Shown: positions 16,191-47,392 of the stretch, piece after piece
Layout of the letters: every line of letters starts with the position of its first letter
Numbering within the stretch: the first letter of the stretch is position 1
From: Macrostomum lignano
Taxonomy: Eukaryota
NCBI GenBank assembly: GCA_002269645.1
Contig: NIVC01002467.1
Span: forward strand, 62,001-126,000
Reading direction: 5' to 3'
Length of the DNA: 64,000 nucleotides
The notes under the pieces: generated by a model
Database searches by the model: none
Seen by the model: the letters and a program-made list of their open reading frames with translations, nothing else
What the model was told of the DNA's origin: nothing
Position numbers and translations under genes: made by a program

Positions 16191-17411
16191 TTAAAAAGTC
16201 TTTTAGTTTTCCTGACGTTGAAAAGCTTTAATTGAAAAAATTATATTCTATGAAAATTCGAACCATCGTCGCTGCATTTATCAAATTTTGCACATATATA
16301 TATAATTCAACAGTTTAAAATCCAAGCATAGAGTAAATCACACGAAGCAGTTATGACATAATCAGTTTCTCAGTCAGTCAGTATCAGTTAACAATATGGT
16401 TACGCAATTTAAATCAAGTCTGGTGCTAGGCTTCCACACTGCATTTTCAATTCAAGTCAGAGTTACAATTCAGTTATGATGTAATCTATTTCAGAATCAG
16501 AATTCAACCAGTCAGTTTTTTCTCTAGCATTCTTACAATGCATTTCAAGTCAAAAAGTTTGCTTGACCTTTGCAAAAAAGCATGTTTTTCGAATATTTAA
16601 TGCCTCTAGCATTGAGCAATTTCTTAGCCACGATGCATGTACCGTCACGGGAAAATTTCTGATCGAACAGTGCAAGTTCGAACAAAATCGGTCCAGCCAT
16701 TTTTTCTCTAATCGATCACATAGATAGATAGATAGATAGATAGATAGACACAGACAGACCATTTTTAGTATATAGGAATTCGAGAATAAGCAGTTTTGCT
16801 TTTACGCTACTATTAGTAGTTCACCTTCGGGAAAATATCTGAAGCTATGGGAATTCGAGTCTTAGCGGGTTTCTCTATTAGTAAAAGGCTGTTTGGCCTC
16901 GGGAAAAGCATCCTGTTCAGGACCGTCCATTGGACAACATTTGTAAGAGATCTAAGTCTCAAATAAGCCAGACTAAGGGAGTCTCCCCTTTATAAAATAA
17001 AAGAATATATATAAGAAAGTATAAAAGGTAAGATCGGGGTAAAATAGGGAGGCTAAGAGGAGTCTACCGCTTAGTCAAAACGGAGTCTACCGAGAATAGG
17101 AATTAGTACAGTCAGTTAGATAGAAGTAAGGGAAAGGAACCAGGAGTCTACCGGTTCTAATAACATAGTAATAATAGTGCTTAAATCTTTGCATATTTGG
17201 TTCAATAATATCATTTTCTTTTGTTTGTTTATTCCAATAATCTTCCATGAAGTCGACTCTTGTCTCACTTATTTTAATCTAAAACTATTATTATAAGGGA
17301 CATTAGTCTGGTGGCAGCAACCTACCAAATTAGAGTACATAATAACAGAAGTAATAATAGAAAACCAGAATAAACCAGTAGCCTAAACCGCAGGTACCAC
17401 GCGTGTCCAAT

Positions 17412-17421
17412 TGGTGGCAGC
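17412..17421 (+). promoter_or_regulatory. Primer-binding site, probably tRNA-Leu
   Basis: TGGTGGCAGC, 2 nt after the LTR end, is complementary to the ...GCUGCCA-CCA 3' end of eukaryotic tRNA-Leu (recalled sequence). Only the first 10 nt match clearly. Confidence 0.75.
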
Positions 17422-17834
17422 TTAAGGGATTAGTAAACCCGAGAAACGCAAAAAAGTTAAGACTGGTGCAAACTAGCAAAAAAATTAGTAAAATATATAA
17501 CCTGCAAAATAAAACGTTTCGGAGAGTCAGAATCAAGTACGAAGGTAATTAATCTAAAAATTACTAAAACTAATACGATAATCCTAATCTTAGGATTAAC
17601 GGATTAAGATCGAATTAACGCTTCTAGTAGCTAATAGTGTCAAAATTAATAGCAAGGTCATAATTGACCCAGTTAAAAGTGAAGAGATCACGCAGTCTAG
17701 CAGTTCTGTTCACAAAAAATTAGAAATAACCAATTAAACTAGCTAGGTAGATCAGTGACTCAGGAGTCTCCCAGTTTCACTGAATTCAATTAATAGTAAA
17801 GTATCAGAAGCGATAATTCGTAATCAGGAATCTA

Positions 17835-18845
17835 ATGGACGCTAATGACGTAGTAGAAGCTTTGGCTGAAGGCATTAGAGACAGGCTAGACATTAGAAAG
17901 CACATTAGGATCCAAAAGTACACGCCTAATCAAGATATAGACGTATGGATTCAGGCTTTTGAGCAAAGGTGTATCGCAGATGAGATACCTGCAGCCGATT
18001 GGAAAAATGAACTACTATCTAATCTAGATGTCCAATCAGCATTTGCTATTGTGACAAGGCTGAATTTAGATCCTAATCTACCGTATGCTGAATTCAAGGA
18101 TAGGCTCATCGAACGATTCACGCATGCGGGTAGTGCCCAAGAAGCTAGGGAAGAATTCCGCAGCAGATATCAATCTAAGACAGAGAGCTCTGACGACTAT
18201 GCGGAGAAGCTGACAGAGTTAGCCTATAGGGCATTTCCCCACCTAACTAATGATCAAAGACAGGAAGAAGTGGTGGAACAATTTATTAGAGGTGTTAGGA
18301 TAACCCCAGAGGCTAGGGAAAAGCTACTGCTAGCACAGGCGAACACACTCCAAGAGACACGTCGAGTCTTGCGACGTATCGAAATGGCGTATACCATGTC
18401 TCGCCGAGGTAGAGATCCAGCTCAGTGCAAGGCAACTGGAGGAGATGAGGCGGAAAGTAGCTTGAGGGAGTTAGTCCGCAAGCAAGGTGAGACACTAGAA
18501 AGCCAGCAGAGGGTACTCCAGGAGTTGCTTCGACACCAGCAGAGTGCTGAGCAGAAGGCTAGGCAGAAGCCGTACCAAGGCCAGCAACAGGGCCAAGGTC
18601 AGAAGCAGCCAGTAAAGTGCTTCAAGTGTGGGAAAAGCGGTCACATAGCTAAGCATTGCCAGCAGCAGCAGAATCAGCCGCAGTTTCCGCAGCAGCAGTT
18701 TCCACAACCACCACAGTTTATTCCGTACCAGCCGCCGTACCCGCCGCCGCAGTTCCCGCAGCAGCAGTTCCCGCAGCAGTACCAGAATAAGAATCAGGGA
18801 AACGGAGTAGCCGGAAGCGTAGGAGGCAACGCTTTCCAGAAGTAG
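17835..18845 (+). CDS. gag: Gag (336 aa) with a CCHC zinc knuckle
   Basis: CFKCGKSGHIAKHC (CX2CX4HX4C) and a retrotransposon gag-like core; first ORF after the PBS. Confidence 0.92.
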   Translation: MDANDVVEALAEGIRDRLDIRKHIRIQKYTPNQDIDVWIQAFEQRCIADEIPAADWKNELLSNLDVQSAFAIVTRLNLDPNLPYAEFKDRLIERFTHAGSAQEAREEFRSRYQSKTESSDDYAEKLTELAYRAFPHLTNDQRQEEVVEQFIRGVRITPEAREKLLLAQANTLQETRRVLRRIEMAYTMSRRGRDPAQCKATGGDEAESSLRELVRKQGETLESQQRVLQELLRHQQSAEQKARQKPYQGQQQGQGQKQPVKCFKCGKSGHIAKHCQQQQNQPQFPQQQFPQPPQFIPYQPPYPPPQFPQQQFPQQYQNKNQGNGVAGSVGGNAFQK

Positions 18846-18867
18846 ACAGCCAGCAGTCTGTAGCCTC
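18797..18867 (+). promoter_or_regulatory. -1 programmed ribosomal frameshift signal (G GGA AAC plus stem-loop or pseudoknot)
   Basis: Slippery heptamer at 18797-18803, correctly phased in the gag frame. The -1 (pol) frame opens just after TAA at 18788-18790. Stem 18813-18820/18829-18837 begins 9 nt downstream. Confidence 0.8.
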
Positions 18868-21800
18868 GCAACCTGTAAATAGCAGCGATAGTTTTTCTGT
18901 AAATAGTGAATTGAATTCTTTGTATAACAGTAGACATGCGCAACCATTTAATCAATCATTTAATCAACCAAATATTTATTCTCAGCACTTTTCACACGCA
19001 CCACAGCAACAACCTTGTTCTAGTAAGCAGCAAATTAAACCACAAAATTTAAGCGAACCAACTAAGAAGCAAAATTACGATCCGTATATTACTGGCAGCA
19101 TTCTAAATAAGGAGGTAGTTTATCTATTAGACACTGGCAGCAATAGGAACATTCTAGGACGTGAAACCTGGAAACACTTGTTCACTGGCAAGAATAGTCA
19201 CTTAATTAAGCAGTGGAACAATAGAATCGTGTCATTCACGGAAGAGCCGATTCCAATTAAAGGTTCCGTAGTTATTAAGGCGACATTCGGTGATTTCGAA
19301 GAAGAAATCGAGTTTCTCTTATGTGACGCAGAAGTAGACAATGTGATAGGCGTGACGTTTGTCCAACAATATTGTAATGCTATCGACTTTGAGGCAGGAA
19401 TGCTAACTATGAAGCAGGGAACTAGAATTCCACTTCGTTCTACCAGAGCTAAGCCTCAGGTTAAGAGAATCTATGTTGCAGAAAAGACGACAGTTCCAGC
19501 TAATAGTTCAGGATTAGTCAAAGTTAGATTAGCCACAGGTAGCGAATCCAATTTCGGAGTGCCGTCAGTTGTTGAGCCACTCAGATCAGGATTGAAGACT
19601 AGAGCAGAGAAGGTAACTGTAGTACCAAGCTTAGTAACTCTAAGGCAAGGAGAAGCGTATCTAGAAGTGATTAACACCAGCTCACAGGAAGCTAGAGTGC
19701 CAGCAGCAGCACTAGTAGGAATGGCTAAGCCACTTTTAGCTAGTGAATTAAACTATCTTAAAGAACAACCAGAGAAAGAGCAGTTATGCCAGAATAAGAA
19801 CACGCAGTTTTGCGAAAACATCAGACAGGTTCAAGACAAGTCAGAAGACTGGATTAGTGAGATTAACATAGGAACTGAACTGACTCAGGAGCAGAGACAG
19901 AAGGTGATCGAAGTCGTCCAGGAGCATTCAGCAGCTTTCTCGCAGCACGAGTTAGACTTAGGCAGAACGCATTTAGTCACACATGAGATTATCTTGAAGG
20001 ACAACAACCCAGTTCAGATACCAGCTAGAAAGATTCCACCTCATTGGATCAAGGAGGTAGATGAGCAGTTAGATCTCATGTTGGCTAGAGGCATCATTAG
20101 GCCTAGTTACTCGCAGTACTCGACTCCATTAGTCATAGTACCTAAGAAAGATGGTTCGCTGAGATTAGTTAACGACTATCGAGCACTAAACAACAAATCG
20201 GAGTACTTTCCGTATCCAATAACTAATATTAATGAAACATTCTCATGTCTCCATGGGGCCAGTCAATTTTCTACGTTAGATCTATTTTCGGGATATTATC
20301 AGATAGCTCTTAGGGAAGAAGATAAATGCAAAACTAGTTTTCCAACTTTACATCGAGGCTCGTTTGAGTACGAAGTTTTGCCAATGGGATTGCAAGGAGC
20401 TCCAGGAACTTTCCAAAGGTGCATGAACTTAGTTCTTAAGGACATTGCACAGAAGTTCGCCATGGCTTACTTAGACGATGTAATAGTTTATAGTACAGAC
20501 TTTGAATCTCACTTAGAACACCTGAAAGAAGTGCTCAAAAGACTAATCCAAGCTAATATGAAACTAAAGGGCGAAGAAATGTCACCTTTTCAAATCGGGA
20601 ACTGCAATATCTAGGACACGTCATAGGCAAATCAGGAATTAAAAGAGATGCGTCAAAGTTAGAAACGATTAGGAACTGGCCAAAACCTAAATCGGTGACA
20701 GAGCTTCGAAGTTTTCTCGGACTCTGTAACTATTATCGAAAGTTTGTTAGAGATTTCGCAGAGGTAGCAGCACCACTCTGTGAGCTAACGAAGAAGAACA
20801 TCAAGTGTATCCAGGACAAATGGACCAGGATTCATGATGAATGCTTCGAGCTGTTGAAGGAACGGATGTGTTCCGAAGAAGTGCTTGCTTACCCAGAGTT
20901 TAATACGGACCCCCAAGTTTATTTTGTGTTAGACACTGATGCATCAGATGTCAGAATTGGGGCGGTCTTAAATCAAGTACAGAGCGACGGAGTTGAGAGA
21001 CCGATCGCGTATTATAGTCGAAAAATGAGGCAGTCAGAAAGTAGATATCCGATTACGAGGAAGGAGCTTCTAGCGATTGTTGACTCGCTGAAGTACTTCA
21101 GGTTTTACCTCGTAGGGAAACGTTTTAAGGTGCGCACTGATCACAATGCCCTAACCTGGTTGCTTCGCCAGACCGAACAGACAGGCATTTTAGGTCGTTG
21201 GATCGAGAGACTTAGTGAATTTGATTTTGAGATTGAGCATAGAAGTGGCCCTAAGCATGTGAATGCTGATGCTCTATCCAGGATCCCGGATCCTCAACAG
21301 GATGAGTCATCCCCATATGCCAGGTCGCTTAGCTGTAGGGCAACTGTGAACACAGACCCAGCATCAGCTGTTACTGTGAGCTCAGGCAATTCCGCGCAAG
21401 CCGAAACCTGTAGTCTGCACAGTGGAGTTACGTCATGCTGTTCGCCGCAGAATATGGCGCCGAACCGACACAATACTCCGAGTTTTAGTAGCAGGTTGCT
21501 AAGCAAAAGGCAAGAACAGGAGCCTAAGGAAAGGCACCCGCTTGTTTGCAATGCACTGCTGAGTGATTACCTTCGTAGCCCTGTGCGTCGCGAAAAATTG
21601 GTCGCAGCTCAGCTAGCCGACCCCGCACTAAGCTATGTCAGGAATCTGATTGAATCTGACTTGCCGAAACCGAACTTTCAAGAAAGACTAGAATTGTCTC
21701 ACGAGATTAGAAATCTGCTAGGCTATTATGAACTCTTCAGGATAGAAGACGGTGTTCTCCGAATAGACTTAAATTTAGGGCGGACCGAATCTAAAGTGGT

Positions 21801-23253
21801 GTTGCCCAAGTCTTTGGATGGTGAAGTTTTTCACGAATTCCACGATTCACCGTTAGCAGGTCATCTAGGAAGAGACAAAACTTATCAGCGAATTAAAGAA
21901 AGATTTTGGAGAGTAGGATTAGCTACAGCAGTCGAAAAGTACGTCGCCAAGTGCAAATCCTGTTTAGAAAGTAAATCAAGAAAGCGATGCAAGGCACCAG
22001 TGCAGAATTTTCCTATTGTCGAGCCATTCTCACGCCTTCACATTGATTTGATAGGTCCGATCAGTCAGACTAGCAAATCTGGTAACAAATATGTCTTGTC
22101 AGTTATTGACAGCACTAGCAAATTTCCGTTTGCGTTTGCAATTAAAAATCAGAAGGCTAAGACAGTAATTAAAATTCTGCAGGAGCGAGTTTTCGCCGAC
22201 TTTGGAATACCTCAGTGGATTCACACAGATCAGGGAACACAATTTACAGGGAGAGCATTTAGGAAGTTTCTAGACCTCTATGGGATTAGGCACACTAGGA
22301 CAACAAGCTATCATCCACAAAGCAATGGGCTAGTAGAAAATTTAAACAAACAAATTAAGTCAATTCTTACCTGTTTGCTCGAGAAAGAACATGCGAACTG
22401 GGATGTTCTATTGCCCGGTTGTATAACTGCATTGCGCACCAGCACGCATACAGCCACAGGTTTCAGCCCGCATTATCTTGTGTTTGGAAGAGAGGCCCGG
22501 ATGCCGAGTGACAATGTGTTCCAGCAGCCAAAGGCGTTCGCCGATCTGCCTGCTTATGTTCAAGAGCACTTGACTCACCTGCAAGAGGGGCAAGAACTCG
22601 CCAAACAGCGGCTCAAATTAATACAACGTAAGCGTGAGCAGCACTATTCTAACAAACCTAAACAACCAGACTTACCTATAGGGAGCTTAGTTTTCATTAA
22701 CAACCCAGTCATCACACAGACAGAAGCCAACAAGTTCCACAGGAAGAGAAGAGCAGTCTACGAGGTCATAGAACAGTTATCAGAAGTAGTTTACAGGATT
22801 AGATTATTAAACAAAAGTACTAAGGCTAGAAAAGAGGAATTAGTCATGCATAGGGATAATTTACTACCCGTACCAACAGCCGATTACGTTAGTGAGGAAG
22901 AAAAGCCAGAAAGCAGTTGTGCCAGGCGACCGAAACTTCGAGAAAATGTGCCGCTTAATCCGATGTACGAAGCAGCCGACAGTGAGAGTGAACATGAAGA
23001 TGAAGTGCAGTTTGTGCCAGTGCAGAGTCAGAATAATGTTCCAGTATCAGTGCAGGATATGCCAGTGCAGGTTATGCCAGTACAAGAAGATAATCTACCA
23101 GTGCAAAATAATAATGAGCAGCCAGCAATCGAAACTAGACCAGTTAGAGATAGACGGGAGCCGAGTAGATTAGCGATAGACCCAGGCCGGAAGAGCTATG
23201 TGCAAAAGGTAACGGAGTTGTTTAACCCCTACCTGCTCTTCCAGCTCGAATAG
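18797..23253 (+). CDS. pol: Pol polyprotein: aspartic protease, RT, RNase H, integrase; interrupted as sequenced by two single-G insertions
   Basis: Protease LLDTGS; [12 protein letters not shown] and YLDD; RNase H DTDAS/YYSRKM/ELLAIV; integrase HHCC (HDSPLAGH...CKSC) with DDE core ([23 protein letters not shown]) and a GPY/F-like tail. The frame break near 20570-20600 is explained by two extra Gs. Confidence 0.93.
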
Positions 23254-23257
23254 CATT

Positions 23258-24094
23258 ATGGCTGACGCCCCGGAGCGGGTATACCCAGTCAAGACAATTT
23301 ACTCGGGAAAGAAAAGAAGAAGAAGTAGCCCCGATGAAAACGAACAGCCACAAGTACGATCGGTACGAGCAAGAGAAGCAACTGAGAAGCCCATAGAAGT
23401 TCAGCAGCGAGAGGAAGTGGACAAGGATAAAGAGGCTGGAGAGTTGGTTGTAGATCTGAATGGAGTAGACCTGGAGGAGGCAACGAGAAGGCATGATGAG
23501 GAGGTGCGGCGAGAACAGGAGGAATTCATGGCAGCTCTACTGGGAGTAGAATTACCTGAACTCGAGGAAGAGCTCAGCCCGAAGAACGACGCCCCAGCAG
23601 AAGTATCGGAACCGCAAGAAATGCCGGAACCTAAGGAAGCGCCGGAGGCGAGGCCGACGACTAATGAGACTCCGGTCGATGTAGCTATCTTCTTCAGGGC
23701 CGACACACCGCAGCCACAAGACCTTGCTGAAAGCAACGAGCAGCCAGGAGCAAGCCCACGAAGTTTCAGGAAGAGTACCAAGGCGCTCAAAAAGTGGCTG
23801 CTAAGAACAGGCAGCACTGGCCACTACGACCCGGCGGTGCCGCCAGAGTGTACTCGATTTCTGGCCCAGGCCACCGCTGAGCAGAAAGTCCAGTGTATGG
23901 AAGTCGCCTGCACGTACGCCCTCCAATATGCTGAGGATAGGGCTAGGGGACCATTGTCGCCCTTCCAAGTAAGTGAGCATCTCCGGGCCATGGTCGAATT
24001 ATTCGACCCAAAGGACAGGCGAACCCCAGCGACTGGCCTCCTTTACCAGTGCTCTCAGCGCGCGCCAACTTGCCGACCGATAGGGCAACTCTAA
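23258..24094 (+). CDS. Third ORF of the gypsy element (278 aa), acidic, with a putative NLS; not env-like
   Basis: ATG lies 4 nt after the pol stop. The ORF is intact and GC-richer than the flanking 3' UTR, has KKRRRSS near the N-terminus, and shows no signal peptide or hydrophobic TM stretch. Confidence 0.75.
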   Translation: MADAPERVYPVKTIYSGKKRRRSSPDENEQPQVRSVRAREATEKPIEVQQREEVDKDKEAGELVVDLNGVDLEEATRRHDEEVRREQEEFMAALLGVELPELEEELSPKNDAPAEVSEPQEMPEPKEAPEARPTTNETPVDVAIFFRADTPQPQDLAESNEQPGASPRSFRKSTKALKKWLLRTGSTGHYDPAVPPECTRFLAQATAEQKVQCMEVACTYALQYAEDRARGPLSPFQVSEHLRAMVELFDPKDRRTPATGLLYQCSQRAPTCRPIGQL

Positions 24095-24668
24095 TAATAG
24101 ACAAGGATTAACATTTCAGCTTTATTAACCTTTTTCTACACAATTAAACAAGCTTTAATTTTTTCTTCTTCTTCGATGTTGTATGCATTTTTTTACACAG
24201 TGCCATAGTGCCATTTATTTTATTTTTTTCTCAAAATTACTGCACCGCTTCTTTGCCTTACATATATATTTACATATCGACATTATTCAGGAAAGTAAGC
24301 CTATATGTTTAGTATTTGCTTAATATTAATCATGCTCTTCAACCCTTACTGGTTATTAATCATTACTCAAAATTTATTGCTCAATTAATATTGTTATGTA
24401 TTGCTCAATTATTATTACTATTGCTCACTGCTCAACATTATTGCTCAATTAATATTGCTATGTATTACTCAATTATTATTGCTCGCTTCATTAACCATGC
24501 TATCATTGCTCAATTATTAATGCTCATTCTTACTTGTAATCCATTAATCATGCTCAATTAATATCGCTCGCATGCCATTACTCAACGAAACTAATATTGT
24601 CTGCATCACTTTACTTGAAATAAACCCGATAATAACTAAATATGCAAAGGGGTTTGCACATTTTTTTT

Positions 24669-24681
24669 AGTGGGGGGTAAG
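24669..24681 (+). promoter_or_regulatory. Polypurine tract (AGTGGGGGGTAAG) preceded by a T-run
   Basis: Immediately upstream of the 3' LTR start at 24682. Confidence 0.8.
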
Positions 24682-25391
24682 TGTAGTAGGGGGGTTTAGT
24701 TCAAGCAGTTTTGCTAAGGCGTTTGCCATTCGTCGGGATGAATTATTTTAGTAGCATGAATTCGAGAATAAGCAGTTTTGCTTTTACGCTACTATTAGTA
24801 GTTCACCTTCGGGAAAATATCTGAAGCTATGGGAATTCGAGTCTTAGCGGGTTTCTCTATTAGTAAAAGGCTGTTTGGCCTCGGGAAAAGCATCCTGTTC
24901 AGGACCGTCCATTGGACAACATTTGTAAGAGATCTAAGTCTCAAATAAGCCAGACTAAGGGAGTCTCCCCTTTATAAAATAAAAGAATATATATAAGAAA
25001 GTATAAAAGGTAAGATCGGGGTAAAATAGGGAGGCTAAGAGGAGTCTACCGCTTAGTCAAAACGGAGTCTACCGAGAATAGGAATTAGTACAGTCAGTTA
25101 GATAGAAGTAAGGGAAAGGAACCAGGAGTCTACCGGTTCTAATAACATAGTAATAATAGTGCTTAAATCTTTGCATATTTGGTTCAATAATATCATTTTC
25201 TTTTGTTTGTTTATTCCAATAATCTTCCATGAAGTCGACTCTTGTCTCACTTATTTTAATCTAAAACTATTATTATAAGGGACATTAGTCTGGTGGCAGC
25301 AACCTACCAAATTAGAGTACATAATAACAGAAGTAATAATAGAAAACCAGAATAAACCAGTAGCCTAAACCGCAGGTACCACGCGTGTCCA
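24682..25391 (+). repeat. 3' LTR (710 bp), intact
   Basis: TG...CA termini; matches the reassembled 5' LTR and the solo LTR. Confidence 0.96.
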
Positions 25392-30374: not shown

Positions 30375-33300
30375 TCACACCTGACTGCACAACCCATCCA
30401 GGTGCTCGTCAAGCATCATGGAACTCATCTGCTGATTCGTTGAGGTCGGCGGCGGCGGCGGCGGTGGAGGCGAAGGCGGCGGGGGCAGCATTTCGAGCAG
30501 TTCGGAGCCGCTCAGCTGCCTGCCGAAAATTGACAGCGGCGGCTTCCGAGAGCCGCGGCCCAGACTGCTGCTGTGCGCACCCTGCTGAAGCTGCTGATGC
30601 TGGAACTGGCCGCACCTGGTCATGAGGATGTCCGGCACCCGAGTTGACACTGAAGCCGTCGAGGCTACTGACAAAGCATGCGGCGACGATAGCGGAGGCA
30701 GCGGCGGAGGCGGCGGCGGCAGTGACGGAAACGACGTGGAGGGAGCGAAGACTTCACTTCTAGTTGCGTAGGTGGCCACGGGCTCGTGACCTCCACCGAA
30801 TGCTGAGAATAGCGGCGCCTGCTGATGCTGCTGATGGTGCAGCAGGTGCTGATGAAACTGATAGTCCGCCACGCCGCTATCTGACGACGAGGCTCCGCCG
30901 ACCTGACTGGACGCTGGCGACGCTGTCGACGCCAGAAACGACAGCTGAGGCAGCGTCGGCCCTCCGCCGCCAGCGGCGCCGCCTGAGCCGCCACCGACGG
31001 AGCCCTCCTTGAAAGTGACCACCCGGTTGTGACCGCCGTTGCCGGGACTCCGCTTCAAACTGCCACCGGCCGAGTCTCGCCGAACCTGGTAAAATGAGAA
31101 AAACAGATTTATAACAGCACCAGCGCAATTCTGCCCATTCCGCAGACTCCTGAGCAACATACAAGCGCCAATACTGTACGCAGGCACAGCACTTAAACAC
31201 ACGCTCACACAGGGTGCACAGCGGCCCTTTGACTTTCTAATCTTCCGACATGCACACTTCACTGTGCATTGGGAGTTGGCCCTCAAGGCCGTTAATTTAG
31301 CCCCAGATTAATGCGACTGCACTTGGAATCGAGCCTGGGCCGCTAGCACATCAGAGCTCCGCGCTAGACCGCTGGGCTACGCCCCCCTCGCCGAACCTGA
31401 TACTTCACCAGGCCGCTCGCTCGCATCCTGTCGGCAGAATCGGCGCTGCTGGCGCCGCCGTCCTCGCTGGCGGATGAGTCCAGCCGCTCCGAGATGGTCG
31501 GCACCATGCCGTGCAGGTGGTGGTACACGTAGCCAGACGTCGACTGCAGATGACTCTGACCCGGCGTCGCCGCGCCTCCGTCGATGCCGGGATTGCCGTC
31601 TCCAGCGCCAGCCGCCTCATCATCTCCCAGATGCTCCTCCTCGCCGACGTCCCGGCCAGCCAGCTGTTCGTCGTCGACTTCGTCCAGCATTCGCTGCAGC
31701 TCGATTCGAATGTCGAACCGGCACAGCGGGGAGCCGCGGCACAGGCCGAGCAGCAGCCAGGCTGCGGTCCAGACCAGAGCGTAGACTCCGCCAGAAATCA
31801 CAGCTCCTAGAAGCACGGGCAATCGGCGCTGTCTGTACAGAGACAGCCAGTCCCAGAATAGCGGAGCTTTGATCACCGCCGAGGCCAGCATGAGCAGCGA
31901 GCCGAGCACCTGGGCGGCCAGGACGCCTCGCTGACAGCAGGCGGTCGGTTCCACGGCTGCTTCTGACGCCGCTGGGCCACCAGTGGAGAAGTCGCTGCCG
32001 CTTGGGGCGATGCAGTTCGACACCGAGTCCAGGTGGTCGGGCTGCTTTGATTGCAGCAGACGCTGCTGCTGTTGCTGCTTCTGCTGCTCCAGCAGATACG
32101 GCCGCAGCTGGCGTAGGCTGGACAGAATCTGGAAGCGGGGTTGATGCTCAACTCAGTCACTCTTCCGGTCACTCTCTCAGTCACTCTCCCGGTCACTCCT
32201 TCAGTTACTCTCCAGGTCACTTTCCCAGTCATTCTACCGGTCACCCTCCTTGTCACTCTCTCAGTCACTCTCCCGGTCACTCTCTCAGTCACTCTCCCGG
32301 TCACTCCTTCAGTCACTCTCCCAGTCATTCTCCCAGTCACCCTCCTGGTCACTCCCTCCGTCACTCTCCCTTGTCACTCTTTCAGTGACTCTCCCGGTCA
32401 CTCTCAGTCACTCTTCCGGCCAATCTGGAAGCGGGGTTGATGCTCAACTCAGTCACTCTCCCTTGTCACTCTTTCAGTGACTCTCCCAGTCACTCTCCCA
32501 GTCAGTCTACCAGTCACTCTCCCGGTCAGTCTACCAGTCACTCTCCCGCAGTTCCCGCAATTCGCACCCGTCCATAGCCAAACTCAAAGAAGGCCACACA
32601 AGCCGTTAGCAGCATCAGATCGCTGAGGGTCTGCAGAGCGGGCACCACAGCTGCTGGCAGGCAGCTGCCGCCGCTGACGCCGCCGTCTGTCGAACCGCCG
32701 ACAACGCCAACACGCAGCAGCACGGCCGAAGCCTCCCTAGACAGCATCACGTGAACGCAGCAAGCGCACAGGACGCCGGAGAATAGCAGCGAAAATGGTC
32801 GGCTAGACAGCCAGAATGTGGACGGATAGCGGATGAGCAGTAGGCACAGGGCCAGTACAAAGTTGGCGACCTCGGCTGTCACTCCCGTACCACCGGCGGC
32901 CACGGGCTCGGCGCCGGCTCGCTCCGGCGGCATCGGATGGCGGGGATATCGTCGACCGAAAAGAAAGTCGAAGCTAGTCGACCAGATCGTGTCTGTGAAT
33001 GTTATTGGTGGTCGATTGGCCTGTGATTAACTACCAATTTTACTCTGTCTGGGGGTTGGGCACCGACAACCACCCCATTTTATAGTGTTTGGGAGGTGAT
33101 TGCTCTTTAACAACCACCCCAATTTTATGGTGTCTAGGAGTGTCGACTCTTTAACAACCGCCCCATTTTATGGTGTCTAGGGGTGTTGACTCTTTAACAA
33201 CCGCCCCATTTTATGGTGTCTAGGGGTGTTGGCTCTTTAACAACCGCCCCATTTTATGGTGTCTAGGGGTGTTGGCTCTTTAACAACCACCTCATTTTTA

Positions 33301-39300: not shown

Positions 39301-42300
39301 TGAGGGGAGAAGGGGATGAGAGAGAAGAGAAAAGAGGGATGAGGAGGGGAGAGAGGAGAGGAGGGGAGAGAGGAGAGGAGGGGAGAGAGGAGAGGAGGGG
39401 AGAGAGGAGAGGAGGGGAGAGAGGAGAGGAGGGGAGAGAGGAGAGGAGGGGAGAGAGGAGAGGAGGGGAGAGAGGAGAGGAGGGGAGAGAGGAGAGGAGG
39501 GGTGAGAGGAGATGAGGGGAGAGAGGAGAGGAGGGGAGAGAGGAGAGGAGGGGAGAGAGGAGAGGAGGGGAGAGAAGAGAGGAGGGGAGAGAGGAGAGGA
39601 GGGGAGAGAGGAGAGGAGGGGAGAGAGGAGAGGAGGGGAGAGAGGAGAGGAGGGGAGAGAGGAGAGAAGGGGAGAGAGGAGAGGAGGGGAGAGAGGAGAG
39701 GAGGGGAGAGAGGAGAGAAGGGGAGAGAGGAGAGGAGGGGAGAGAGGAGAGGAGGGGAGAGAGGAGAGGAGGAGAGATGAGAGAGATGATTGCTATTGCG
39801 AATTTTCAAAGGACCCGAGGGCCGGTAGAGGCGTTGCAGGCCGGAGCTTGCAACCCCTGATCTGATCTACGTGATACCATAGACAAATGAACCAGAAGCA
39901 CACGCTAAAACCGATTTTATTAGAAATAAGCCGGATGCCTAGAGAGGCATTTAGCTATGCTTCACTAGACAAATCGGTTTTCTACTCGACTGAATTTGTC
40001 TATGGCCAAACCCCATTCAGCGCTATGCATTCTGGGCTCATTGCTAAGAAACTCGAATGTAGCGTCCTTTTATGTGCATAACCCAACAAAGCGCTCACCC
40101 CTCTCACAGGGGTCGTGTGTCAGAGCAGGACAGATGGTAGCAAGACAGCAGCAAACTGGGACACGACACGGCAAACTGCCTTTATATTATAAATCACCCG
40201 CGGAGCAAAGGAATTGTGGTAAACTAAATATGGGATAGGAGAGCCTAAAGCATGACAATAATCTTCCCAATACGCGTGCAATACCGCAAGCAGATCAGGG
40301 CAAAAGGGTGCAGAATCAAGGAGATGGCGAAACAAGGACTATGAAGTGCTTGATCTGCTTCAATTCCTACATTTCTATGGGATTAAAATTTAGACCCGAC
40401 ATCATAAAAAGGAATCTCTATAATACTAAGACTACACATGTAAATCGTATAATATAACACCCATGTGCTCCCCGCCTCCCAAACTCGAATGAACTCGTTA
40501 CTACAACGCAAAGACAAGAAAGAGAATGGCATGGTTTAGACTTAACAAACTGATTTGAAGCACAGGATTTAACACAAAGGACACAAAGAACACCCCGTGT
40601 TGCTAGCTTAGTGCTACATGCGATAGAGCCATTTGAGGACAAAGCATTAAAGGGCGTGGCTCTCGTTCTGTGATCGGTATTTTTTTAGCCTGCATGATCC
40701 CTTTTAAATTTGTGCCCCGGCACTGGAGAAAGCTCTTTGTTTTCTAAATCTTTTAGCATAGAGCTAAATCCTTATCCTTAAGCACTATTTCTGATATCAG
40801 TAAAACTTCATAGTACCGAAAATACACTGACATAGCGTTCACTGGAATTCTCAATTCGAGATCCTGACGCCTCACTTCCTTTCCTGACCCCTCACTTCCT
40901 TTCCTGACCCCTCACTTCCTTTCCTGACCCCTCACTTCCTTTCCTGACCCCTCACTTCCTTTCCTGACCCCTCACTTCCTTTCCTGACCCCTCACTTCCT
41001 TTCCTGACCCCTCACTTCCTTTCCTGACCCCTCACTTCCTTTCCTGACCCCTCACTTCCTTTCCTGACCCCTCACTTCCTTTCCTGACCCCTCACTTCCT
41101 TTCCTGACCCTCACTTCCTTTCCTGACCCTCACTTCCTTTCCTGACCCCTCACTTCCTTTCCTGACCCCTCACTTCCTTTCCTGACACCTCACTTCCTTT
41201 CCTGACACCTCACTTCCTTTCCTGACCCCTCACTTCCTTTCCTGACCCCTCACTTCCTTTCCTGACCCCTCACTTCCTTTCCTGACCCCTCACTTCCTTT
41301 CCTGACCCCTCACTTCCTTTCCTGACCCCTCACTTCCTTTCCTGACCCCTCACTTCCTTTCCTGACCCCTCACTTCCTTTCCTGACCCCTCACTTCCTTT
41401 CCTGACCCCTCACTTCCTTTCCTGACCCCTCACTTCCTTTCCTGACCCCTCACTTCCTTTCCTGACCCCTCACTTCCTTTCCTGACCCCTCACTTCCTTT
41501 CCTGACCCCTCACTTCCTTTCCTGACCCCTCACTTCCTTTCCTGACCCCTCACTTCCTTTCCTGACACCTCACTTCCTTTCCTGACCCCTCACTTCCTTT
41601 CCTGACCCCTCACTTCCTTTCCTGACCCCTCACTTCCTTTCCTGACCCCTCACTTCCTTTCCTGACCCCTCACTTCCTTTCCTGACCCCTCACTTCCTTT
41701 CCTGACCCCTCACTTCCTTTCCTGACCCCTCACTTCCTTTCCTGACCCCTCACTTCCTTTCCTGACCCCTCACTTCCTTTCCTGACCCCTCACTTCCTTT
41801 CCTGACACCTCACTTCCTTTCCTGACACCTCACTTCCTTTCCTGACCCTCACTTCCTTTCCTGACACCTCACTTCCTTTCCTGACCCCTCACTTCCTTTC
41901 CTGACCCCTCACTTCCTTTCCTGACCCCTCACTTCCTTTCCTGACCCCTCACTTCCTTTCCTGACCCCTCACTTCCTTTCCTGACACCTCACTTCCTTTC
42001 CTGACACCTCACTTCCTTTCCTGACCCCTCACTTCCTTTCCTGACCCCTCACTTCCTTTCCTGACCCCTCACTTCCTTTCCTGACCCCTCACTTCCTTTC
42101 CTGACCCCTCACTTCCTTTCCTGACACCTCACTTCCTTTCCTGACACCTCACTTCCTTTCCTGACACCTCACTTCCTTTCCTGACACCTCAGTTCCTTTC
42201 CTGACACCTCAGTTTCTCTCCTGACACCTCAGTTCCTTTCCTGACACCTCAGTTCCTTTCCTGACACCTCAGTTTCTCTCCTGACACCTCAGTTCCTCTC

Positions 42301-44130
42301 CTGACACCTCAGTTCCTCTCCTGACACAGCTCACTTTCTTTCCTGACACCTCACTTCCTCTCTTGACACTTCACTTCTTCTCCTGACACTTCACTTCCTT
42401 TCCTGACACCTCACTTCCTCTGCTGACACCTCACTTCCTTTCCTGACACCTCACTTCCTCTCCTGACACCTCACTTCCTTTCCTGACACCTCACTTCCTT
42501 TCCTGACACCTCACTTCCTTTCCTGACACCTCACTTCCTTTCCTGACACCTCACTTCCTTTCATGACCCCTCACTTCCTTTCCTGACACCTCAGTTCCTT
42601 TCCTGACACCTCAGTTTCTCTCCTGACACCTCAGTTCCTCTCCTGACACCTCAGTTTCTCTCCTGACACCTCAGTTCCTCTCCTGACACCTCAGTTCCTC
42701 TCCTGACACAGCTCACTTTCTTTCCTGACACCTCACTTCCTCTCTTGACACTTCACTTCTTCTCCTGACACTTCACTTCCTTTCCTGACACCTCACTTCC
42801 TCTGCTGACACCTCACTTCCTTTCCTGACACCTCACTTCCTCTCTTGACACCTCACTTCCTTTCCTGACACCTCACTTCCTCTCTTGACACTTCACTTCC
42901 TCTCCTGACACCTCAATTCCTCTCCTGACACCTCAGCTCCGATTCTGACACCTCACTTCCTCTCCTGACATCTCAGCTCCGATTCTGACACCTCACTTCC
43001 TCTCCTGACACCTCAATTTCTCTCCTGACACCTCACTTCCTCTCCTGACACCTCACTTTCTCTCCTAACACCTCACTTCCTCTCCTGACACCTCACTTTC
43101 TCTCCTGACACCTCACTTCCTCTCCTGACACCTCACTTTCTCTTCTGACACCACAGCTCCGATTCTGACGCCTCACTTCCTTTCCTGACACTTCACTTCC
43201 TCTCTTGACACTTCACTTCTTCTCCTGACACCTCACTTCCTTTTCTGACACTTCACTTCTCCTGACACCTCACTTCCTTTCCTGACACCTCACTTCCTTT
43301 CCTGACACCTCACTTCCTTTCCTGACACCTCACTTCCTTTCCTGACACCTCACTTCCTTTCCTGACACCTCACTTCCTTTCCTGACACCTCACTTCCTTT
43401 CCTGATACCTCACTTCCTTTCCTGACACTTCACTTCCTCTCCTGACACCTCACTTCCTCTCCTGACACCTCACTTTCTCTCCTGACACCACAGCTCCGAT
43501 TCTGACACATCAGTTCCGATTCTGACAGTCAACTTTTTTCATAAAATCCAAATTTCCCTTTTTTTTATTCCAATGGCTATTTCGTCAGAGTCAGAGATGT
43601 CACAAATCTACATATGCACATGCGAGCTATCACGCATTCCAGCTCATACCTTTTGGCGCCTCCTCGTGCAGCACAGCTTGAGCCTCCAGAGCAGGCAGCG
43701 GAGCCAGCAGGCACATCGCAATCAGCAGGTGCAAGCCGCAGGTTGGCGGCAGAAAGTGGCGCCTCATCCTGCTAGCGCAGCTGCCGCCGCTGCTACTCGA
43801 AGAAGCAACAGAAGCCGGCGCGGCCACGCCAGCCTCAGCCATGGCCATCCGCAGGCTCGCCCGATCCCGGCCCAAGGCCACTCCATCGTCGGCATAGTTG
43901 CCAGTTGAGGCGAAGGCGGCATAGGCGAACAGCGTTGCTAAGCAACCGGCAGTCAGTATGGCCGCTAAATAGCAGTTCATGGGCTCCTGCGGCCACAGCT
44001 CTCTCATTGCCCGGCTCCGATAGTCCAGATAGCGACAGGCGGCCGCATAGAGCAGGAATGCCTGCAGCAGCAGCACCAGCAGGGCGTACCAGACACGCCA
44101 CAGTCTGTCTAATTTGCGATTTCGTCGCAT
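30375..44130 (-). CDS. tinc: Tincar-like multi-pass transmembrane protein (~782 aa, 4 exons)
   Basis: Exons 44130-43650, 32992-32568, 32128-31397 and 31085-30375 have GT-AG boundaries, matching phases and no in-frame stop. Motifs LWRVWY, GNYADDGVALG, PPT..LHLLIAMCLLAP, IWSTSFDFL and IRYPSTFW parallel recalled Drosophila Tincar motifs (LWSVWY, GNLANDG, IWATELDFL, VRYPAVFW). The protein ends in CSQV. Confidence 0.8.
31089..31386 (-). mobile_element. tRNA-derived SINE-like element (298 bp) with a 13-bp TSD, constituting tincar intron 3
   Basis: The head GGGGGCGTAGCCCAGCGGTCTAGC... has an A-box TAGCCCAGCGG (31379-31369) and a B-box-like GGCTCGATTCC (31335-31325), 33 nt apart. It is flanked by the direct repeat CAGGTTCGGCGAG (31399-31387 and 31088-31076). 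Only one copy is seen in the window. Confidence 0.7.
32153..32545. repeat. Degenerate ~12-bp minisatellite (GTCACTCTCCCG/A) filling tincar intron 2
   Basis: Directly visible. Confidence 0.9.
33060..33320. repeat. 43-bp minisatellite, ~6 copies
   Basis: Period of 43 between 33147 and 33190. Confidence 0.85.
34145..34435. repeat. Pyrimidine-rich 25-29-bp minisatellite (CTTCCCTCCCTTATCTCTACTCTCT)
   Basis: Directly visible. Confidence 0.88.
35281..36718. repeat. Polypurine (GAGAG)n / (GGGGAGAGAGGAGAGGA)n array
   Basis: Directly visible. Confidence 0.95.
37190..38605. repeat. 39-bp minisatellite built from 9-bp GTAGACAGA subunits
   Basis: Directly visible; two alternating variants (AAGGGA / AATGCA). 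Confidence 0.95.
39255..39785. repeat. 17-bp polypurine minisatellite (GGGGAGAGAGGAGAGGA)
   Basis: Directly visible. Confidence 0.92.
40863..43525. repeat. 20-bp satellite (CCTGAC[C/A]CCTCACTTCCTTT), homogeneous at left and diverged at right
   Basis: About 130 copies. Confidence 0.96.
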
Positions 44131-44430
44131 CGAATTCTATTGGCACAGCACAGCACAGTCTGGGTTGCCTTTTGTCCAGCTTCAAATTCTATTGTAAATT
44201 TTTTAGCTGTGCTAAATTCTATTCTGGAACCCGTTCTTATAGGCTATATTATACCTTTCTCTCTATTAGTTGGTTATTAGCCAATCAAAAGAGGGCAGCA
44301 GTTTGAACATCATTCTCTGTAGCTAATTTTACATTCCATACTACTTATTGTAGACGGATAGTAGAGGAATAAGCGCGTTACGATTGGAAGTCAGGGACTT
44401 CATGGGAAATTTGGGTCTTGGGAGATAATA

Positions 44431-46480
44431 GGTGTCAGTCAATGGAGAGACAGTGAGGTGTCAGTCAATGGAGAGACAGTGAGGTGTCAGTCAATGGAGA
44501 GACAGTGAGGTGTCAGTCAATGGAGAGACAGTGAGGTGTCAGTCAATGGAGAGACAGTGAGGTGTCAGTCAATGGAGAGACAGTGAGGTGTCAGTCAATG
44601 GAGAGACAGTGAGGTGTCAGTCAATGGAGAGACAGTGAGGTGTCAGTCAATGGAGAGACAGTGAGGTGTCAGTCAATGGAGAGACAGAGAGGTGTCAGTC
44701 AATGGAGAGACAGTGAGGTGTCAGTCAATGGAGAGACAGTGAGGTGTCAGGAGAGACAGTGGGTGTCAGGAGAGACAATGGAGTGTCAGGAGAGACAATG
44801 GAGTGTCAGGAGAGACAATGAAGTGTCAAGAGAGGCCATGAAGTGTCAGGAGAGACAGTTAGGTGTCAGGAGAGACAATGGAGTGTCAGGAGAGACAATG
44901 GAGTGTTCGGAGAGACAATGAAGTGTCAGGAGAGACAATGAAGTGTCAGGAGAGACAGTGAGCTGTCAGGAGAGACAATGAAGTGTCAGGAGAGACAATG
45001 GAGTGTCAGGAGAGACAATGAAGTGTCAGGAGAGACAATGAAGTGTCAGGAGAGACAGTTAGGTATCAGGAGAGACAATGGGGTGTCAGGAGAGACAGTT
45101 AAGTGTCAGGAGAGACAATGGAGTGTCAGGAGAGACAGTTAGGTGTCAGGAGAGACAATGGAGTGTCAGGAGAGACAGTCAGGAGAGACAATGGAGTGTC
45201 AGGAGAGACAATGGAGTGTCAGGAGAGACAGTTAGGTGTCAGGAGAGACAATGGAGTGTCAGGAGAGACAGTTAGGTGTCAGGAGAGACAATGAAGTGTC
45301 AGGAGAGACAGTGAGCTGTCAGGAGAGACAATGAAGTGTCAGGAGAGACAATGGAGTGTCAGGAGAGACAATGGAGTGTCAGGAGAGACAGTTAGGTGTC
45401 AGGAGAGACAATGAAGTGTCAGGAGAGACAATGGAGTGTCAGGAGAGACAGTTAGGTGTCAGGAGAGACAATGGAGTGTCAGGAGAGACAGTTAGGTGTC
45501 AGGAGAGACAATGGAGTGTCAGGAGAGACAGTTAGGTGTCAGGAGAGACAATGAATGTCAGGAGAGACAATGGAGTGTCAGGAGAGACAATGAAGTGTCA
45601 GGAGAGACAATGGAGTGTCAGGAGAGACAATGAAGTGTCAGGAGAGACAATGGAGTGTCAGGAGAGACAATGAAGTGTCAGGAGAGACAATGAAGTGTCA
45701 GGAGAGACAATGAAGTGTCAGGAGAGACAATGGAGTGTCAGGAGAGACAATGGAGTGTCAGGAGAGACAGTTAGGTGTCAGGAGAGACAATGGAGTGTCA
45801 GGAGAGACAATGGAGTGTCAGGAGAGACAATGAAGTGTCAGGAGAGACAATGGAGTGTCAGGAGAGACAATGGAGTGTCAGGAGAGACAATGGAGTGTCA
45901 GGAGAGACAATGAAGTGTCAGGAGAGACAATGAAGTGTCAGGAGAGACAATGGAGTGTCAGGAGAGACAGTTAGGTGTCAGGAGAGACAATGGAGTGTCA
46001 GGAGAGACAATGAAGTGTCAGGAGAGACAATGAAGTGTCAGGAGAGACAATGAAGTGTCAGGAGAGACAATGGAGTGTCAGGAGAGACAATGAAGTGTCA
46101 GGAGAGACAATGAAGTGTCAGGAGAGACAATAAAGTGTCAGGAGAGACAATGAAGTGTCAGGAGAGACAATGGAGTGTCAGGAGAGACAATGAAGTGTCA
46201 GGAGAGACAATGAAGTGTCAGGAGAGACAATGGAGTGTCAGGAGAGACAATGGAGTGTCAGGAGAGACAATGGAGTGTCAGGAGAGACAATGGAGTGTTC
46301 GGAGAGACAAAAAAGTGTCAAGAGAGGCCATGAAGTGTCAGGAGAGACAGTTGGATGTCAGGAGAGACAGTGGGGTGTCAGGAGAGACAGTGGGGTGTCA
46401 GGAGAGACAATGGAGTGTCAAGAGAGGCCATGAAGTGTCAGGAGAGACAGTTGGATGTCAGGAGAGACAGTGGGGTGTAA
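44431..46480. repeat. Satellite of 26-bp then 20-bp units (GTGTCAGGAGAGACAATGRA)
   Basis: Directly visible. The 26-bp unit equals the 20-bp unit plus TCAATG. Confidence 0.96.
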
Positions 46481-47392
46481 GGAGGCAGTGAAACTCTTAT
46501 AAAGTCCCCCCCCCTGCATGCAGCTATAGCCGTCACGGTTCAGAGAAGACAAAGCAGAAAAAGAAGAATAATTTGGCCGATCCAAATTAGGAGCAGAAAA
46601 ATGAAAGCAGGACGAAGAGACAGGAAAAATGACAACTGCCTACGTCAAAGAAGTTTTGGGTGCAATAATTTCAATAATATAATTAATATTTCGTAAGATC
46701 GCAGCTAATTATCATAACAGCTCGGCTGCTAATTAAAGCATTGGTATGCATTTCCTGGAGCCTGCATATTTTCCGAGCCTAATTAACTGTTGCATAAACA
46801 CAGTCAACAATGGAAACAATTCACAAGACAGATGAGCAAGTTTATATAACAGAACACAAAATTTGTCAATTAATATTAATTAAAATTTATTGTCCAATGT
46901 TAGACAAAAGTTATTGTCTATCATAACTCAGGCCAAGTGTATTTTACATTCACCGCACAAATTTTACAAGGAATAAACAGCAAACAAAAAATAAAAATCC
47001 AACCAGTATGGAACAAGTATGACACAATTAAAATCATCAACTTATGTACTTTAAGCAGAGCGACTGCTTTCTATCAAATAACAAAAAAATGGTGTGTTTT
47101 CTAGTGTCTTTTCTAACGAAAACACACTTAGAAGTTATTAATAAAGCATTCATTTTAAACACGAACTGTCATACTTATCTAAGTAGTCATCAGTAGTCTA
47201 TCGCGTGAATATAAAAATGCATAAAAAGATAGTTTTTATTAATGGAACTCCAACTGAAATTTAGCATCAATAATCAATAATAATCATTCCTTTGCTCTTA
47301 TCGTTCTTTTAAGCAAGTCAATTTTGCAAGAGTCCAAACAGCGACCATGTTGACGAAGCTGGAAGAAAATTGTAGAATGGAGACTTTAGAAA

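What the first reader, a model, noticed from the sequence alone, without database searches (positions are those of the whole stretch)
31076..31399. An intron that is exactly a SINE: tRNA-derived insertion whose TSD supplies both splice sites (retro-introner)
Seen (minus strand): exon ...GTG AAG TAT [CAG|GTTCGGCGAG] GGGGGCGTAGCCCAGCGG...GGCTCGATTCC...CTGTTTTTCTCATTTTAC [CAG|GTTCGGCGAG] ACTCG... exon. A 298-bp element with Pol III A/B boxes and a tRNA-like 5' end lies between two perfect 13-bp direct repeats. Ten nt of the downstream exon are duplicated at the intron start. The left repeat provides the GT donor and the right repeat provides the AG acceptor. The element's 3' end is a T/C tract (polypyrimidine tract and possible Pol III terminator) rather than an A-tail. 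Splicing removes 311 nt (element plus one repeat) and restores the frame exactly (VKYQ|VRRD). Established: known introners are mostly DNA transposons, and intron gain from SINEs is only rarely reported. Inference: if this family is dispersed and targets CAG|GT sites, it would be an intron-generating retroelement system.
Basis: partly seen in the sequence, partly recalled or inferred. Interest (0 to 1): 0.9.

Follow-up and report, generated by a model that had tools for sequence, protein, structure and literature searches.

The report
SINE-like insertion that may be an intron
A 298-base retroposon with a tRNA-type promoter sits inside a coding exon of a flatworm (Macrostomum lignano) gene, and the 13 bases duplicated at its insertion happen to supply both splice signals, so it may be a newly made intron; neither its splicing nor an intron-making family could be checked here.

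Summary
On the minus strand, a 298-nt non-coding insert (31386..31089) lies between two perfect 13-nt direct repeats, CAGGTTCGGCGAG. It interrupts a GC-rich coding exon, and removing 311 nt restores a 445-codon open frame. The insert starts with A and B boxes at canonical tRNA positions and ends in a T-rich tract. ARAGORN and Rfam both fail to call a tRNA there.

The window comes from Macrostomum lignano or a very close relative. The structure fits a young SINE-type retroposon inserted in sense orientation. Its target happened to contain CAG|GT, so a donor and an acceptor lie in register.

Splicing is plausible. A conserved COG4 intron in the same window uses the near-identical donor CAG|GTTCGC, and only 3.9% of 13-nt targets in this exon contain AGGT. 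No transcript data were reachable, so splicing is not shown.

I found no second copy, no empty site and no partner LINE. This hidden polyploid could also tolerate a gene copy broken by the insertion.

The "retro-introner family" idea is untested. Single SINE-made introns and retrotransposon-derived introners are already published, so this is a possible new member of a known kind, of moderate interest.

The parts
31387..31399 (-). Upstream copy of the 13-nt target-site duplication CAGGTTCGGCGAG. CAG (31399..31397) is the end of the upstream exon part. GTTCGG (31396..31391) is the proposed donor.
31089..31386 (-). 298-nt non-coding insert, a SINE-type retroposon in sense orientation to the gene. 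It is 53% GC with no codon periodicity and has stops in all frames.
31369..31379 (-). A-box-like motif TAGCCCAGCGG, element nt 8-18
31325..31335 (-). B-box-like motif GGCTCGATTCC, element nt 52-62
31089..31106 (-). T-rich 3' tail CTGTTTTTCTCATTTTAC. It would serve as the polypyrimidine tract of the proposed acceptor. Its T5 and T4 runs resemble Pol III terminators. There is no A-tail.
31076..31088 (-). Downstream copy of the duplication. CAG (31088..31086) is the proposed acceptor. GTTCGGCGAG (31085..31076) is the start of the downstream exon part.
31397..32023 (-). Upstream part of the interrupted coding exon (open frame; the true exon start is not defined). It includes predicted membrane-spanning stretches.
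30381..31085 (-). Downstream part of the interrupted coding exon. It ends at a good donor, CAG|GTGTGA (intron starts at 30380), or at the TGA at 30377..30375 if that donor is not used.
31401..31408 (-). Alternative in-frame donor CTG|GTGAAGTA (GT at 31408). With the same acceptor it would remove 323 nt and four codons.

Best explanation
A young, full-length copy of a short retroposon with an internal Pol III promoter (a SINE with a decayed tRNA-like head) inserted into a long coding exon of a Macrostomum lignano gene. It lies in the same orientation as the gene. The insertion mechanism was probably target-primed reverse transcription by a LINE enzyme, which duplicated 13 (possibly 16) bp of target.

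The target happened to contain CAG|GT. The upstream copy therefore offers a donor (CAG|GTTCGG) and the downstream copy an acceptor (CAG|G), in exact register. The element's T-rich tail lies directly before that AG as a polypyrimidine tract. The spliceosome can then remove the element plus one repeat copy (311 nt) and restore the original mRNA. On this reading the insertion persists as a newly gained intron.

Shown: the anatomy, the duplication, the frame restoration, and the use of an almost identical donor in a neighbouring gene. Inferred: the retroposition mechanism, and the splicing itself.
For: - **Duplication.** The 13-nt repeat is perfect and unique in the window, and it abuts the insert on both sides.
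- **5' boundary.** The insert starts exactly at tRNA position +1. A and B boxes sit at nt 8-18 and 52-62. Of 23 conserved tRNA nucleotides, 22 are present. Of 21 cloverleaf pairs, 13 form (shuffle mean 8.7, P=0.045).
- **Element type.** No terminal inverted repeats and no ORF.
- **Host exon.** The flanks have coding periodicity, and a 445-codon frame is restored.
- **Donor.** Five COG4 introns in the same window were inferred from a spliced model that aligns continuously to Pfam COG4_m 1-291 and to COG4_N. They use the donors AG|GTTTGT, CAG|GTTCGC, GTGAGT, GTGAGA and GTGGGT, and every acceptor is CAG|. GTT donors and CAG|G junctions are therefore normal here.
- **Acceptor.** The candidate acceptor has 16 pyrimidines among the 20 bases at -23 to -4 (my count from the sequence), at least as many as the COG4 acceptors.
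- **AGGT coincidence.** Only 3.9% of 13-nt windows in this exon contain AGGT. A splice-competent duplication would be a rare coincidence for a random, merely tolerated insertion.
- **Genome context.** Published repeat tables give SINEs 0.39% and LINEs 1.66% of the M. lignano assembly. One 298-nt copy in 64 kb (0.47%) is the expected density.
Against: - **No expression evidence.** No transcript evidence of any kind was reachable. No protein in the searched collections covers this exon.
- **tRNA finders negative.** ARAGORN and Rfam do not recognise a tRNA.
- **Copy number and tail.** Only one copy was found. There is no A-tail and no identified partner LINE.
- **Internal terminator.** A T5 run 15 nt before the element's end would be expected to terminate Pol III early.
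- **Weak donor by general standards.** The donor has T at +3. A competing donor, GTGAAG, lies 12 nt upstream.
- **Redundancy.** The sequenced DV1 line of M. lignano is a hidden polyploid with 180 Mb of near-identical duplicated blocks, so a broken copy could persist without being spliced.
The finding was picked out because of the AGGT coincidence, which weakens that argument.
Confidence: 0.55

Rival explanations
1. The insertion is real, but it is simply a disruptive mutation. This is a recent retroposon hit in one of several redundant copies of the gene in a hidden polyploid. It is not spliced, or only poorly spliced, and it truncates the protein after 11 extra codons. The AG|GT in the duplication is coincidence.
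For: - Read-through gives an early stop.
- The M. lignano DV1 assembly has 180 Mb of duplicated non-repetitive blocks at 95% identity or more, and extra large chromosomes.
- No annotated protein covers this exon.
- The perfect duplication suggests a very recent event that selection may not yet have tested.
- An intact gypsy element with 100% identical 634-nt LTRs lies 6 kb away, so retrotransposition is currently active.
Against: - Only 3.9% of possible 13-nt targets in the exon contain AGGT, and only half of insertions would be in sense orientation.
- The acceptor context is strong, and the donor matches one used in COG4.
- The rest of the 445-codon frame is intact.
- The one frameshift seen nearby in COG4 lies in a G run. 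It is probably an assembly error. The very young gypsy copy shows two similar frameshifts, which are best explained the same way.
Confidence: 0.33
2. The element belongs to a dispersed SINE family that preferentially lands in CAG|GT sites and systematically creates introns, a 'retro-introner' system in an animal.
For: - The single copy here has exactly the architecture such a family would need.
- SINEs make up 0.39% of the genome, roughly 10,000 copies of this size, so a family probably exists.
- Introner families derived from non-LTR retrotransposons exist in other eukaryotes.
Against: - One copy cannot show either target preference or repeated intron creation.
- There is no second copy in 64 kb.
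- None of the five COG4 introns shows more than consensus-level in-register identity, and all contain minisatellites rather than this element.
- In the 2022 survey, introners were found in only two animal groups among 835 animal and plant genomes.
- LINE-mediated insertion has no known reason to prefer AG|GT.
Confidence: 0.07
3. The insert is not a SINE. It could be filler DNA captured during repair of a staggered double-strand break, as proposed for direct-repeat-flanked new introns in Daphnia (recalled from the literature, not checked here). It could be a fragment of another element class. It could also be an assembly artefact.
For: - tRNA finders and Rfam are negative.
- There is no A-tail, no partner LINE and no second copy.
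- The assembly shows homopolymer indel errors.
Against: - The 5' end coincides with tRNA position +1, the A and B boxes are in canonical register, and 22 of 23 invariant positions are present. Random filler would not be expected to show this.
- A perfect 13-nt duplication directly abutting both ends is the signature of insertion, not of misassembly.
- There are no terminal inverted repeats.
Confidence: 0.05

Closest known systems
[quoted passage not shown] 2007 (PMC2394776)
   Same: A single SINE insertion into a coding exon that is removed as an intron.
   Different: That case is in a plant and rests on experimental and comparative support. Here splicing is only predicted, and both splice sites come from the target duplication rather than from the element. 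I could not check how the rice sites arose.
Alu 'intronization' in human 3' UTRs (Sela et al. 2007, PMC2394776)
   Same: A SINE insertion into an exon gives rise to a new, spliced intron in an animal.
   Different: Those introns lie in untranslated last exons and are alternatively spliced. They depend on splice sites inside Alu or created by mutation. They are not an exact element-plus-duplication excision that restores a coding frame.
Introners, i.e. intron-generating transposable elements (Gozashti et al. 2022, PMC9860276; 2025, PMC12130899)
   Same: Element plus target duplication equals the intron. Some families (Florenciella) take both splice sites from the insertion site. About 5% of classified families derive from non-LTR retrotransposons.
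   Different: Introners are defined by many near-identical intron copies. Only one copy is seen here. Most introners are DNA transposons with 3-9 bp duplications. No SINE with a Pol III promoter and no flatworm is mentioned in the main text of either paper, as far as I could search it.
tRNA-derived SINEs without a poly(A) tail, mobilised by a LINE that recognises a shared 3' tail (established knowledge of SINE biology)
   Same: About 300 nt, with internal A and B boxes. The 5' end lies at the Pol III start. The flanking duplication is of variable length, above 10 bp. The element is non-coding.
   Different: No partner LINE or shared tail has been identified. The head is too decayed for tRNA finders. 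T runs lie just inside the 3' end.
Intron gain by duplication of an AGGT-containing segment (model cited in PMC2394776)
   Same: Two copies of AGGT in register define the new donor and acceptor, and splicing restores the original message.
   Different: In that model the intron is duplicated exon sequence. Here only 13 nt are duplicated, and the intron body is foreign, an inserted element.

Membership tests
tRNA-derived SINE | Internal Pol III promoter: A and B boxes at tRNA-like positions near the 5' end | tested here: met
   TAGCCCAGCGG lies at nt 8-18 and GGCTCGATTCC at nt 52-62. The degenerate pattern is unique in the window, with 0 expected.
tRNA-derived SINE | Head detectably derived from a tRNA | tested here: inconclusive
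   22 of 23 conserved tRNA positions are present, and 13 of 21 cloverleaf pairs form (P=0.045). ARAGORN down to 70% of its thresholds and Rfam in E-value mode find nothing. No eukaryotic tRNA set was available for comparison.
tRNA-derived SINE | Short, non-coding, no terminal inverted repeats | tested here: met
   298 nt, stops in all six frames, no inverted termini.
tRNA-derived SINE | Flanked by a target-site duplication of LINE-type length | tested here: met
   13 nt perfect, or 16 nt with one mismatch.
tRNA-derived SINE | Many dispersed copies in the genome | not testable with these tools
   One copy in the window. No Macrostomum genome was reachable. The literature gives SINEs as 0.39% of the assembly.
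tRNA-derived SINE | 3' tail that is A-rich, a simple repeat, or shared with a partner LINE | tested here: inconclusive
   The tail is T-rich (CTGTTTTTCTCATTTTAC) with no A-tail. No LINE and no tail match exist in the window. A partner LINE elsewhere could not be sought.
Introner (intron-generating transposable element family) | Element, with or without its duplication, coincides exactly with GT...AG boundaries, and removal restores the reading frame | tested here: met
   Removing 31396..31086 (311 nt) gives 445 codons with no stop.
Introner (intron-generating transposable element family) | Multiple similar copies that each form an intron in different genes | not testable with these tools
   Only one copy is available. 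The five COG4 introns in the window are unrelated to it.
Introner (intron-generating transposable element family) | Shown to be spliced from transcripts | not testable with these tools
   No transcript data were reachable. No protein spanning the junction exists in the collections.
U2-type spliceosomal intron | GT donor, AG acceptor, polypyrimidine tract, and signals comparable to other introns of the species | tested here: met
   The donor is CAG|GTTCGG, against CAG|GTTCGC in COG4 intron 2. The acceptor is TTTTTCTCATTTTACCAG|G. No clear branch-point motif sits at the usual distance; this comes from my reading of the sequence.
   No homologue of the exon among 1.84 billion representatives apart from a low-complexity hit. 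Pfam finds nothing. The only word-index hit is a mis-fused M. lignano COG4 model.

The most novel reading that the evidence does not exclude
The element belongs to an active SINE family of Macrostomum lignano whose sense-oriented insertions into CAG|GT-containing exon sites are routinely spliced out. Their own T-rich tail serves as the polypyrimidine tract. That would make it a Pol III-transcribed, LINE-mobilised intron-generating element in an animal.
Probability: 0.07. Interest if true: 0.8.

Novelty: new member of a known kind. Interest (0 to 1): 0.4.

Why it matters
Cases where the origin of a spliceosomal intron can be read directly from the sequence are rare in animals.

If this 311-nt segment is spliced, it would be a clean example of a coding-region intron made in one step by a retroposon. 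Both splice sites would be inherited from the duplicated target, and the pyrimidine tract would come from the element's tail.

M. lignano is a laboratory model with transgenesis and abundant RNA-seq data. The prediction can therefore be checked quickly: junction reads, an empty site in paralogous copies or sister lines, and a minigene assay. A census of the family would show whether this is a one-off or part of a wider process of intron gain.

If it is not spliced, it is an ordinary disruptive insertion in a redundant gene copy.

Tried and rejected
**Searches for more copies or an empty site**
- blastn of the element against the window found only itself.
- Exact-pattern scans of JGI metagenomes (twice), IMG/VR and GTDB genomes gave 0 hits.
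- A six-frame peptide query built from the element, meant to catch ORFs called over other copies, gave no hit.
- The M. lignano protein P0001 is not on record in the contig index.
- Ten window ORFs are not in the protein collection. No further Macrostomum DNA could therefore be fetched.

**Searches for homologues of the host gene**
- Two word-index searches and one full HMMER search of 1.84 billion representatives returned nothing for the interrupted exon.
- The host gene is unnamed, the 'tincar' label is rejected as unverifiable, and intron positions in orthologues could not be compared.

**tRNA and RNA-family detection**
- ARAGORN at default and relaxed thresholds, Rfam in E-value mode on 2.5 kb and on 110 nt, and Rfam at gathering thresholds on the whole window were all negative.
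- Folding of the head and of the whole element gave no significant structure: z = 0.11 and z = -1.98.

**Literature**
- Full-text searches for sequence strings from the element returned only chance primer matches.
- The supplements of the 2025 introner paper are not held.

**Ideas considered and rejected**
- A DNA transposon or MITE: there are no inverted termini, and a 13-bp duplication does not fit.
- A decaying duplicated segment, suggested by a COG4 frameshift. A gypsy element in the window with 100% identical LTRs carries two frameshifts of the same kind, which points to assembly indel errors instead.
Full report
**What is there**

On the minus strand the sequence reads ...GTG AAG TAT CAG|GTTCGGCGAG-[298 nt]-CAG|GTTCGGCGAG ACTCGG....
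- The 13-nt repeat is perfect, with copies 311 nt apart.
- It occurs nowhere else in the 64 kb even with one mismatch allowed. Shuffles give 0.04 matches on average, and none of 100 gave two.
- One more base triplet on the 5' side matches at 2 of 3 positions (TAT/TAC). The duplication may therefore be 16 nt with one change.
- The 298 nt between the repeats (31386..31089) have no second copy in the window.
- They have stops in all six frames and no terminal inverted repeats.

**The flanks are one interrupted coding exon**

| Segment | GC | GC by codon position |
|---|---|---|
| Upstream part, 627 nt | 66% | 0.70 / 0.52 / 0.76 |
| Downstream part, 708 nt | 65% | 0.66 / 0.58 / 0.71 |
| Insert, 298 nt | 53% | no periodicity |

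- Reading through the insert stops after 11 codons.
- Deleting 31396..31086 (311 nt) gives 445 codons with no stop.
- The downstream part ends at a good donor, CAG|GTGTGA, so this looks like a long internal exon.

**Organism and host gene**

The only database relative of the gene's upstream exon is a UniRef protein of Macrostomum lignano labelled COG4 (P0001). It matches two COG4 exons in the window at 97-99% identity, and it also matches the exon at 43630-44130. The window is therefore from M. lignano or a very close relative.

The window content fits the published description of that genome (LTR retrotransposons 21%, tandem repeats 13-15%).
- Tandem repeats cover 43% of it.
- It contains a young gypsy element.

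The interrupted exon itself has no detectable homologue.
- A word-index search of the spliced exon found nothing. A second one, of the gene's membrane-spanning parts, found only P0001, through the exon at 43630-44130.
- A full HMMER pass over 1.84 billion representatives returned only a proline-rich low-complexity hit.
- Pfam found nothing.

**What the insert is**

- Its first base corresponds to tRNA position 1.
- TAGCCCAGCGG lies at nt 8-18 and GGCTCGATTCC at nt 52-62. This is the canonical register of the Pol III A and B boxes.
- A degenerate A-box/gap/B-box pattern hits only here, with none expected.
- I mapped the head onto standard tRNA numbering from established knowledge. On that mapping, 22 of 23 conserved positions are present (T54 is C).
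- Of 21 cloverleaf pairs, 13 can form, against a shuffle mean of 8.7 (P=0.045).
- The anticodon and T stems are broken. ARAGORN, even at 70% of its thresholds, and Rfam do not call a tRNA.
- The 3' end is CTGTTTTTCTCATTTTAC, with no A-tail.

A promoter-bearing head that starts at the Pol III start site, a length near 300 nt, no coding capacity and a 13-16 nt duplication together fit a SINE mobilised by a LINE enzyme.

Three features could not be tested: copy number, a partner LINE, and homology to a named SINE family. No Macrostomum sequence beyond the window was reachable. The published repeat table gives SINEs 0.39% and LINEs 1.66% of the assembly. One 298-nt copy in 64 kb (0.47%) is about the expected density.

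One oddity remains. A T5 run lies 15 nt inside the 3' end, where a Pol III transcript would be expected to stop. If the duplication is read as 16 nt, the element ends in ...CATTT, which looks like a Pol III 3' end.

**Could it be spliced?**

I reconstructed the neighbouring COG4 gene as a local control. The five-exon spliced model aligns in one continuous stretch to Pfam COG4_m (1-291 of 291, 214 bits) and to COG4_N. This supports the inferred junctions below.

| COG4 intron | Donor | Acceptor |
|---|---|---|
| 1 | AG\|GTTTGT | CAG\| |
| 2 | CAG\|GTTCGC | CAG\| |
| 3 | CAG\|GTGAGT | CAG\| |
| 4 | CAG\|GTGAGA | CAG\| |
| 5 | CAG\|GTGGGT | CAG\| |

- The candidate donor CAG|GTTCGG looks weak by general metazoan standards. 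It nevertheless matches a donor used in a conserved housekeeping gene 23 kb away almost exactly.
- The candidate acceptor, TCTGTTTTTCTCATTTTACCAG|G, is richer in pyrimidines than the COG4 acceptors.
- In-register identity across intron ends is 3-8 nt for the COG4 introns and 13 nt for the candidate.
- A competing in-frame donor, CTG|GTGAAGTA, lies 12 nt upstream.
- I saw no convincing branch-point motif at the usual distance.

**Intron or broken gene?**

For the intron reading:
- Only 3.9% of 13-nt target windows in this exon contain AGGT.
- Only half of insertions would be in sense orientation, which is what places the T-rich tail before the AG.
- A splice-competent configuration is therefore unlikely for a random insertion that is merely tolerated. 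It is expected if spliceability is the reason the insertion survives.

Against it:
- The finding was selected because of this coincidence.
- M. lignano DV1 is a hidden polyploid with 180 Mb of near-identical duplicated blocks, so a disrupted copy could persist.
- The perfect duplication suggests a very recent event.
- No transcript or protein evidence covers the exon. The published annotation excluded transcripts that overlap repeats, so this absence carries little weight.

A 1-nt frameshift in a G run of the last COG4 exon might suggest a decaying duplicate. However, a gypsy element in the window whose 634-nt LTRs are 100% identical has two similar frameshifts within about 30 nt of its pol gene. 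These are more likely long-read assembly errors.

My estimates are about 0.85 that this is a genuine retroposon insertion and about 0.55 that it is spliced as an intron.

**Comparison with what is known**

- A SINE-made intron in a coding region is on record for rice catalase A. Alu-made introns are known in human 3' UTRs (PMC2394776).
- Introner surveys describe families that recruit both splice sites from the insertion site (Florenciella). They found introners in only two animal groups (PMC9860276).
- The 2025 survey attributes about 5% of classified introner families to non-LTR retrotransposons and about 12% to LTR retrotransposons (PMC12130899).

What would be new is a Pol III-type SINE doing this in the coding region of a flatworm gene. 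A family-level 'retro-introner' system has no evidence beyond this one copy, and I put it at about 0.07.

**Verdict**

This is a possible new member of a known kind. Interest is moderate because the prediction is sharp and can be tested directly with existing M. lignano data.

Noticed in passing
window 16776-25391 (+): Intact Ty3/gypsy LTR retrotransposon of about 8.6 kb. Its 634-nt LTRs (16776-17409 and 24758-25391) are 100% identical, so the insertion is very recent. ORFs: gag 17835-18845, PR/RT 18911-20614, RH/IN 20695-23253, and an extra ORF at 23258-24094.
   Followed up: partly
window 20570-20610 (+): Two 1-nt frameshifts within about 30 nt split the gypsy pol gene (KLKG / KCHLF / [10 protein letters not shown] lie in three frames) although the LTRs are identical. 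They are most likely homopolymer indel errors of a long-read assembly. Run lengths elsewhere in the window may be unreliable for the same reason.
   Followed up: partly
window about 49225-49245 (-): The last exon of COG4 has a 1-nt frameshift in a G5 run: FNRLG in one frame, then GLQLDREVRSL... in the next, which stays open to the natural stop. This is probably an assembly error. The alternative is a very recent disabling mutation in this gene copy.
   Followed up: partly
window 48990-55582 (-): COG4 gene with at least six exons. Two of the five inferred donors have T at +3 (AG|GTTTGT at 55110, CAG|GTTCGC at 54004). All inferred junctions are CAG|. GTT donors may be unusually common in this species.
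   Followed up: partly
whole window, e.g. 11253-16188, 40862-43489, 44430-46484, 52923-53973: 29 tandem-repeat arrays cover 43% of the window, mostly with periods of 20-28 nt. Almost every intron and intergenic stretch carries its own distinct minisatellite, including all five COG4 introns. The candidate intron is the only one without one.
   Followed up: no
window 43630-44130 (-) and P0001: The UniRef M. lignano 'COG4' protein P0001 fuses COG4 exons with the first exon of the downstream membrane-protein gene and skips or garbles several COG4 exons. It is a faulty gene model, perhaps reflecting a polycistronic transcription unit.
   Followed up: no
window 1193-2398 (+) and 58003-59502 (+): Further long GC-rich open frames with no Pfam match. 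They may be exons of other lineage-specific genes and were not examined.
   Followed up: no
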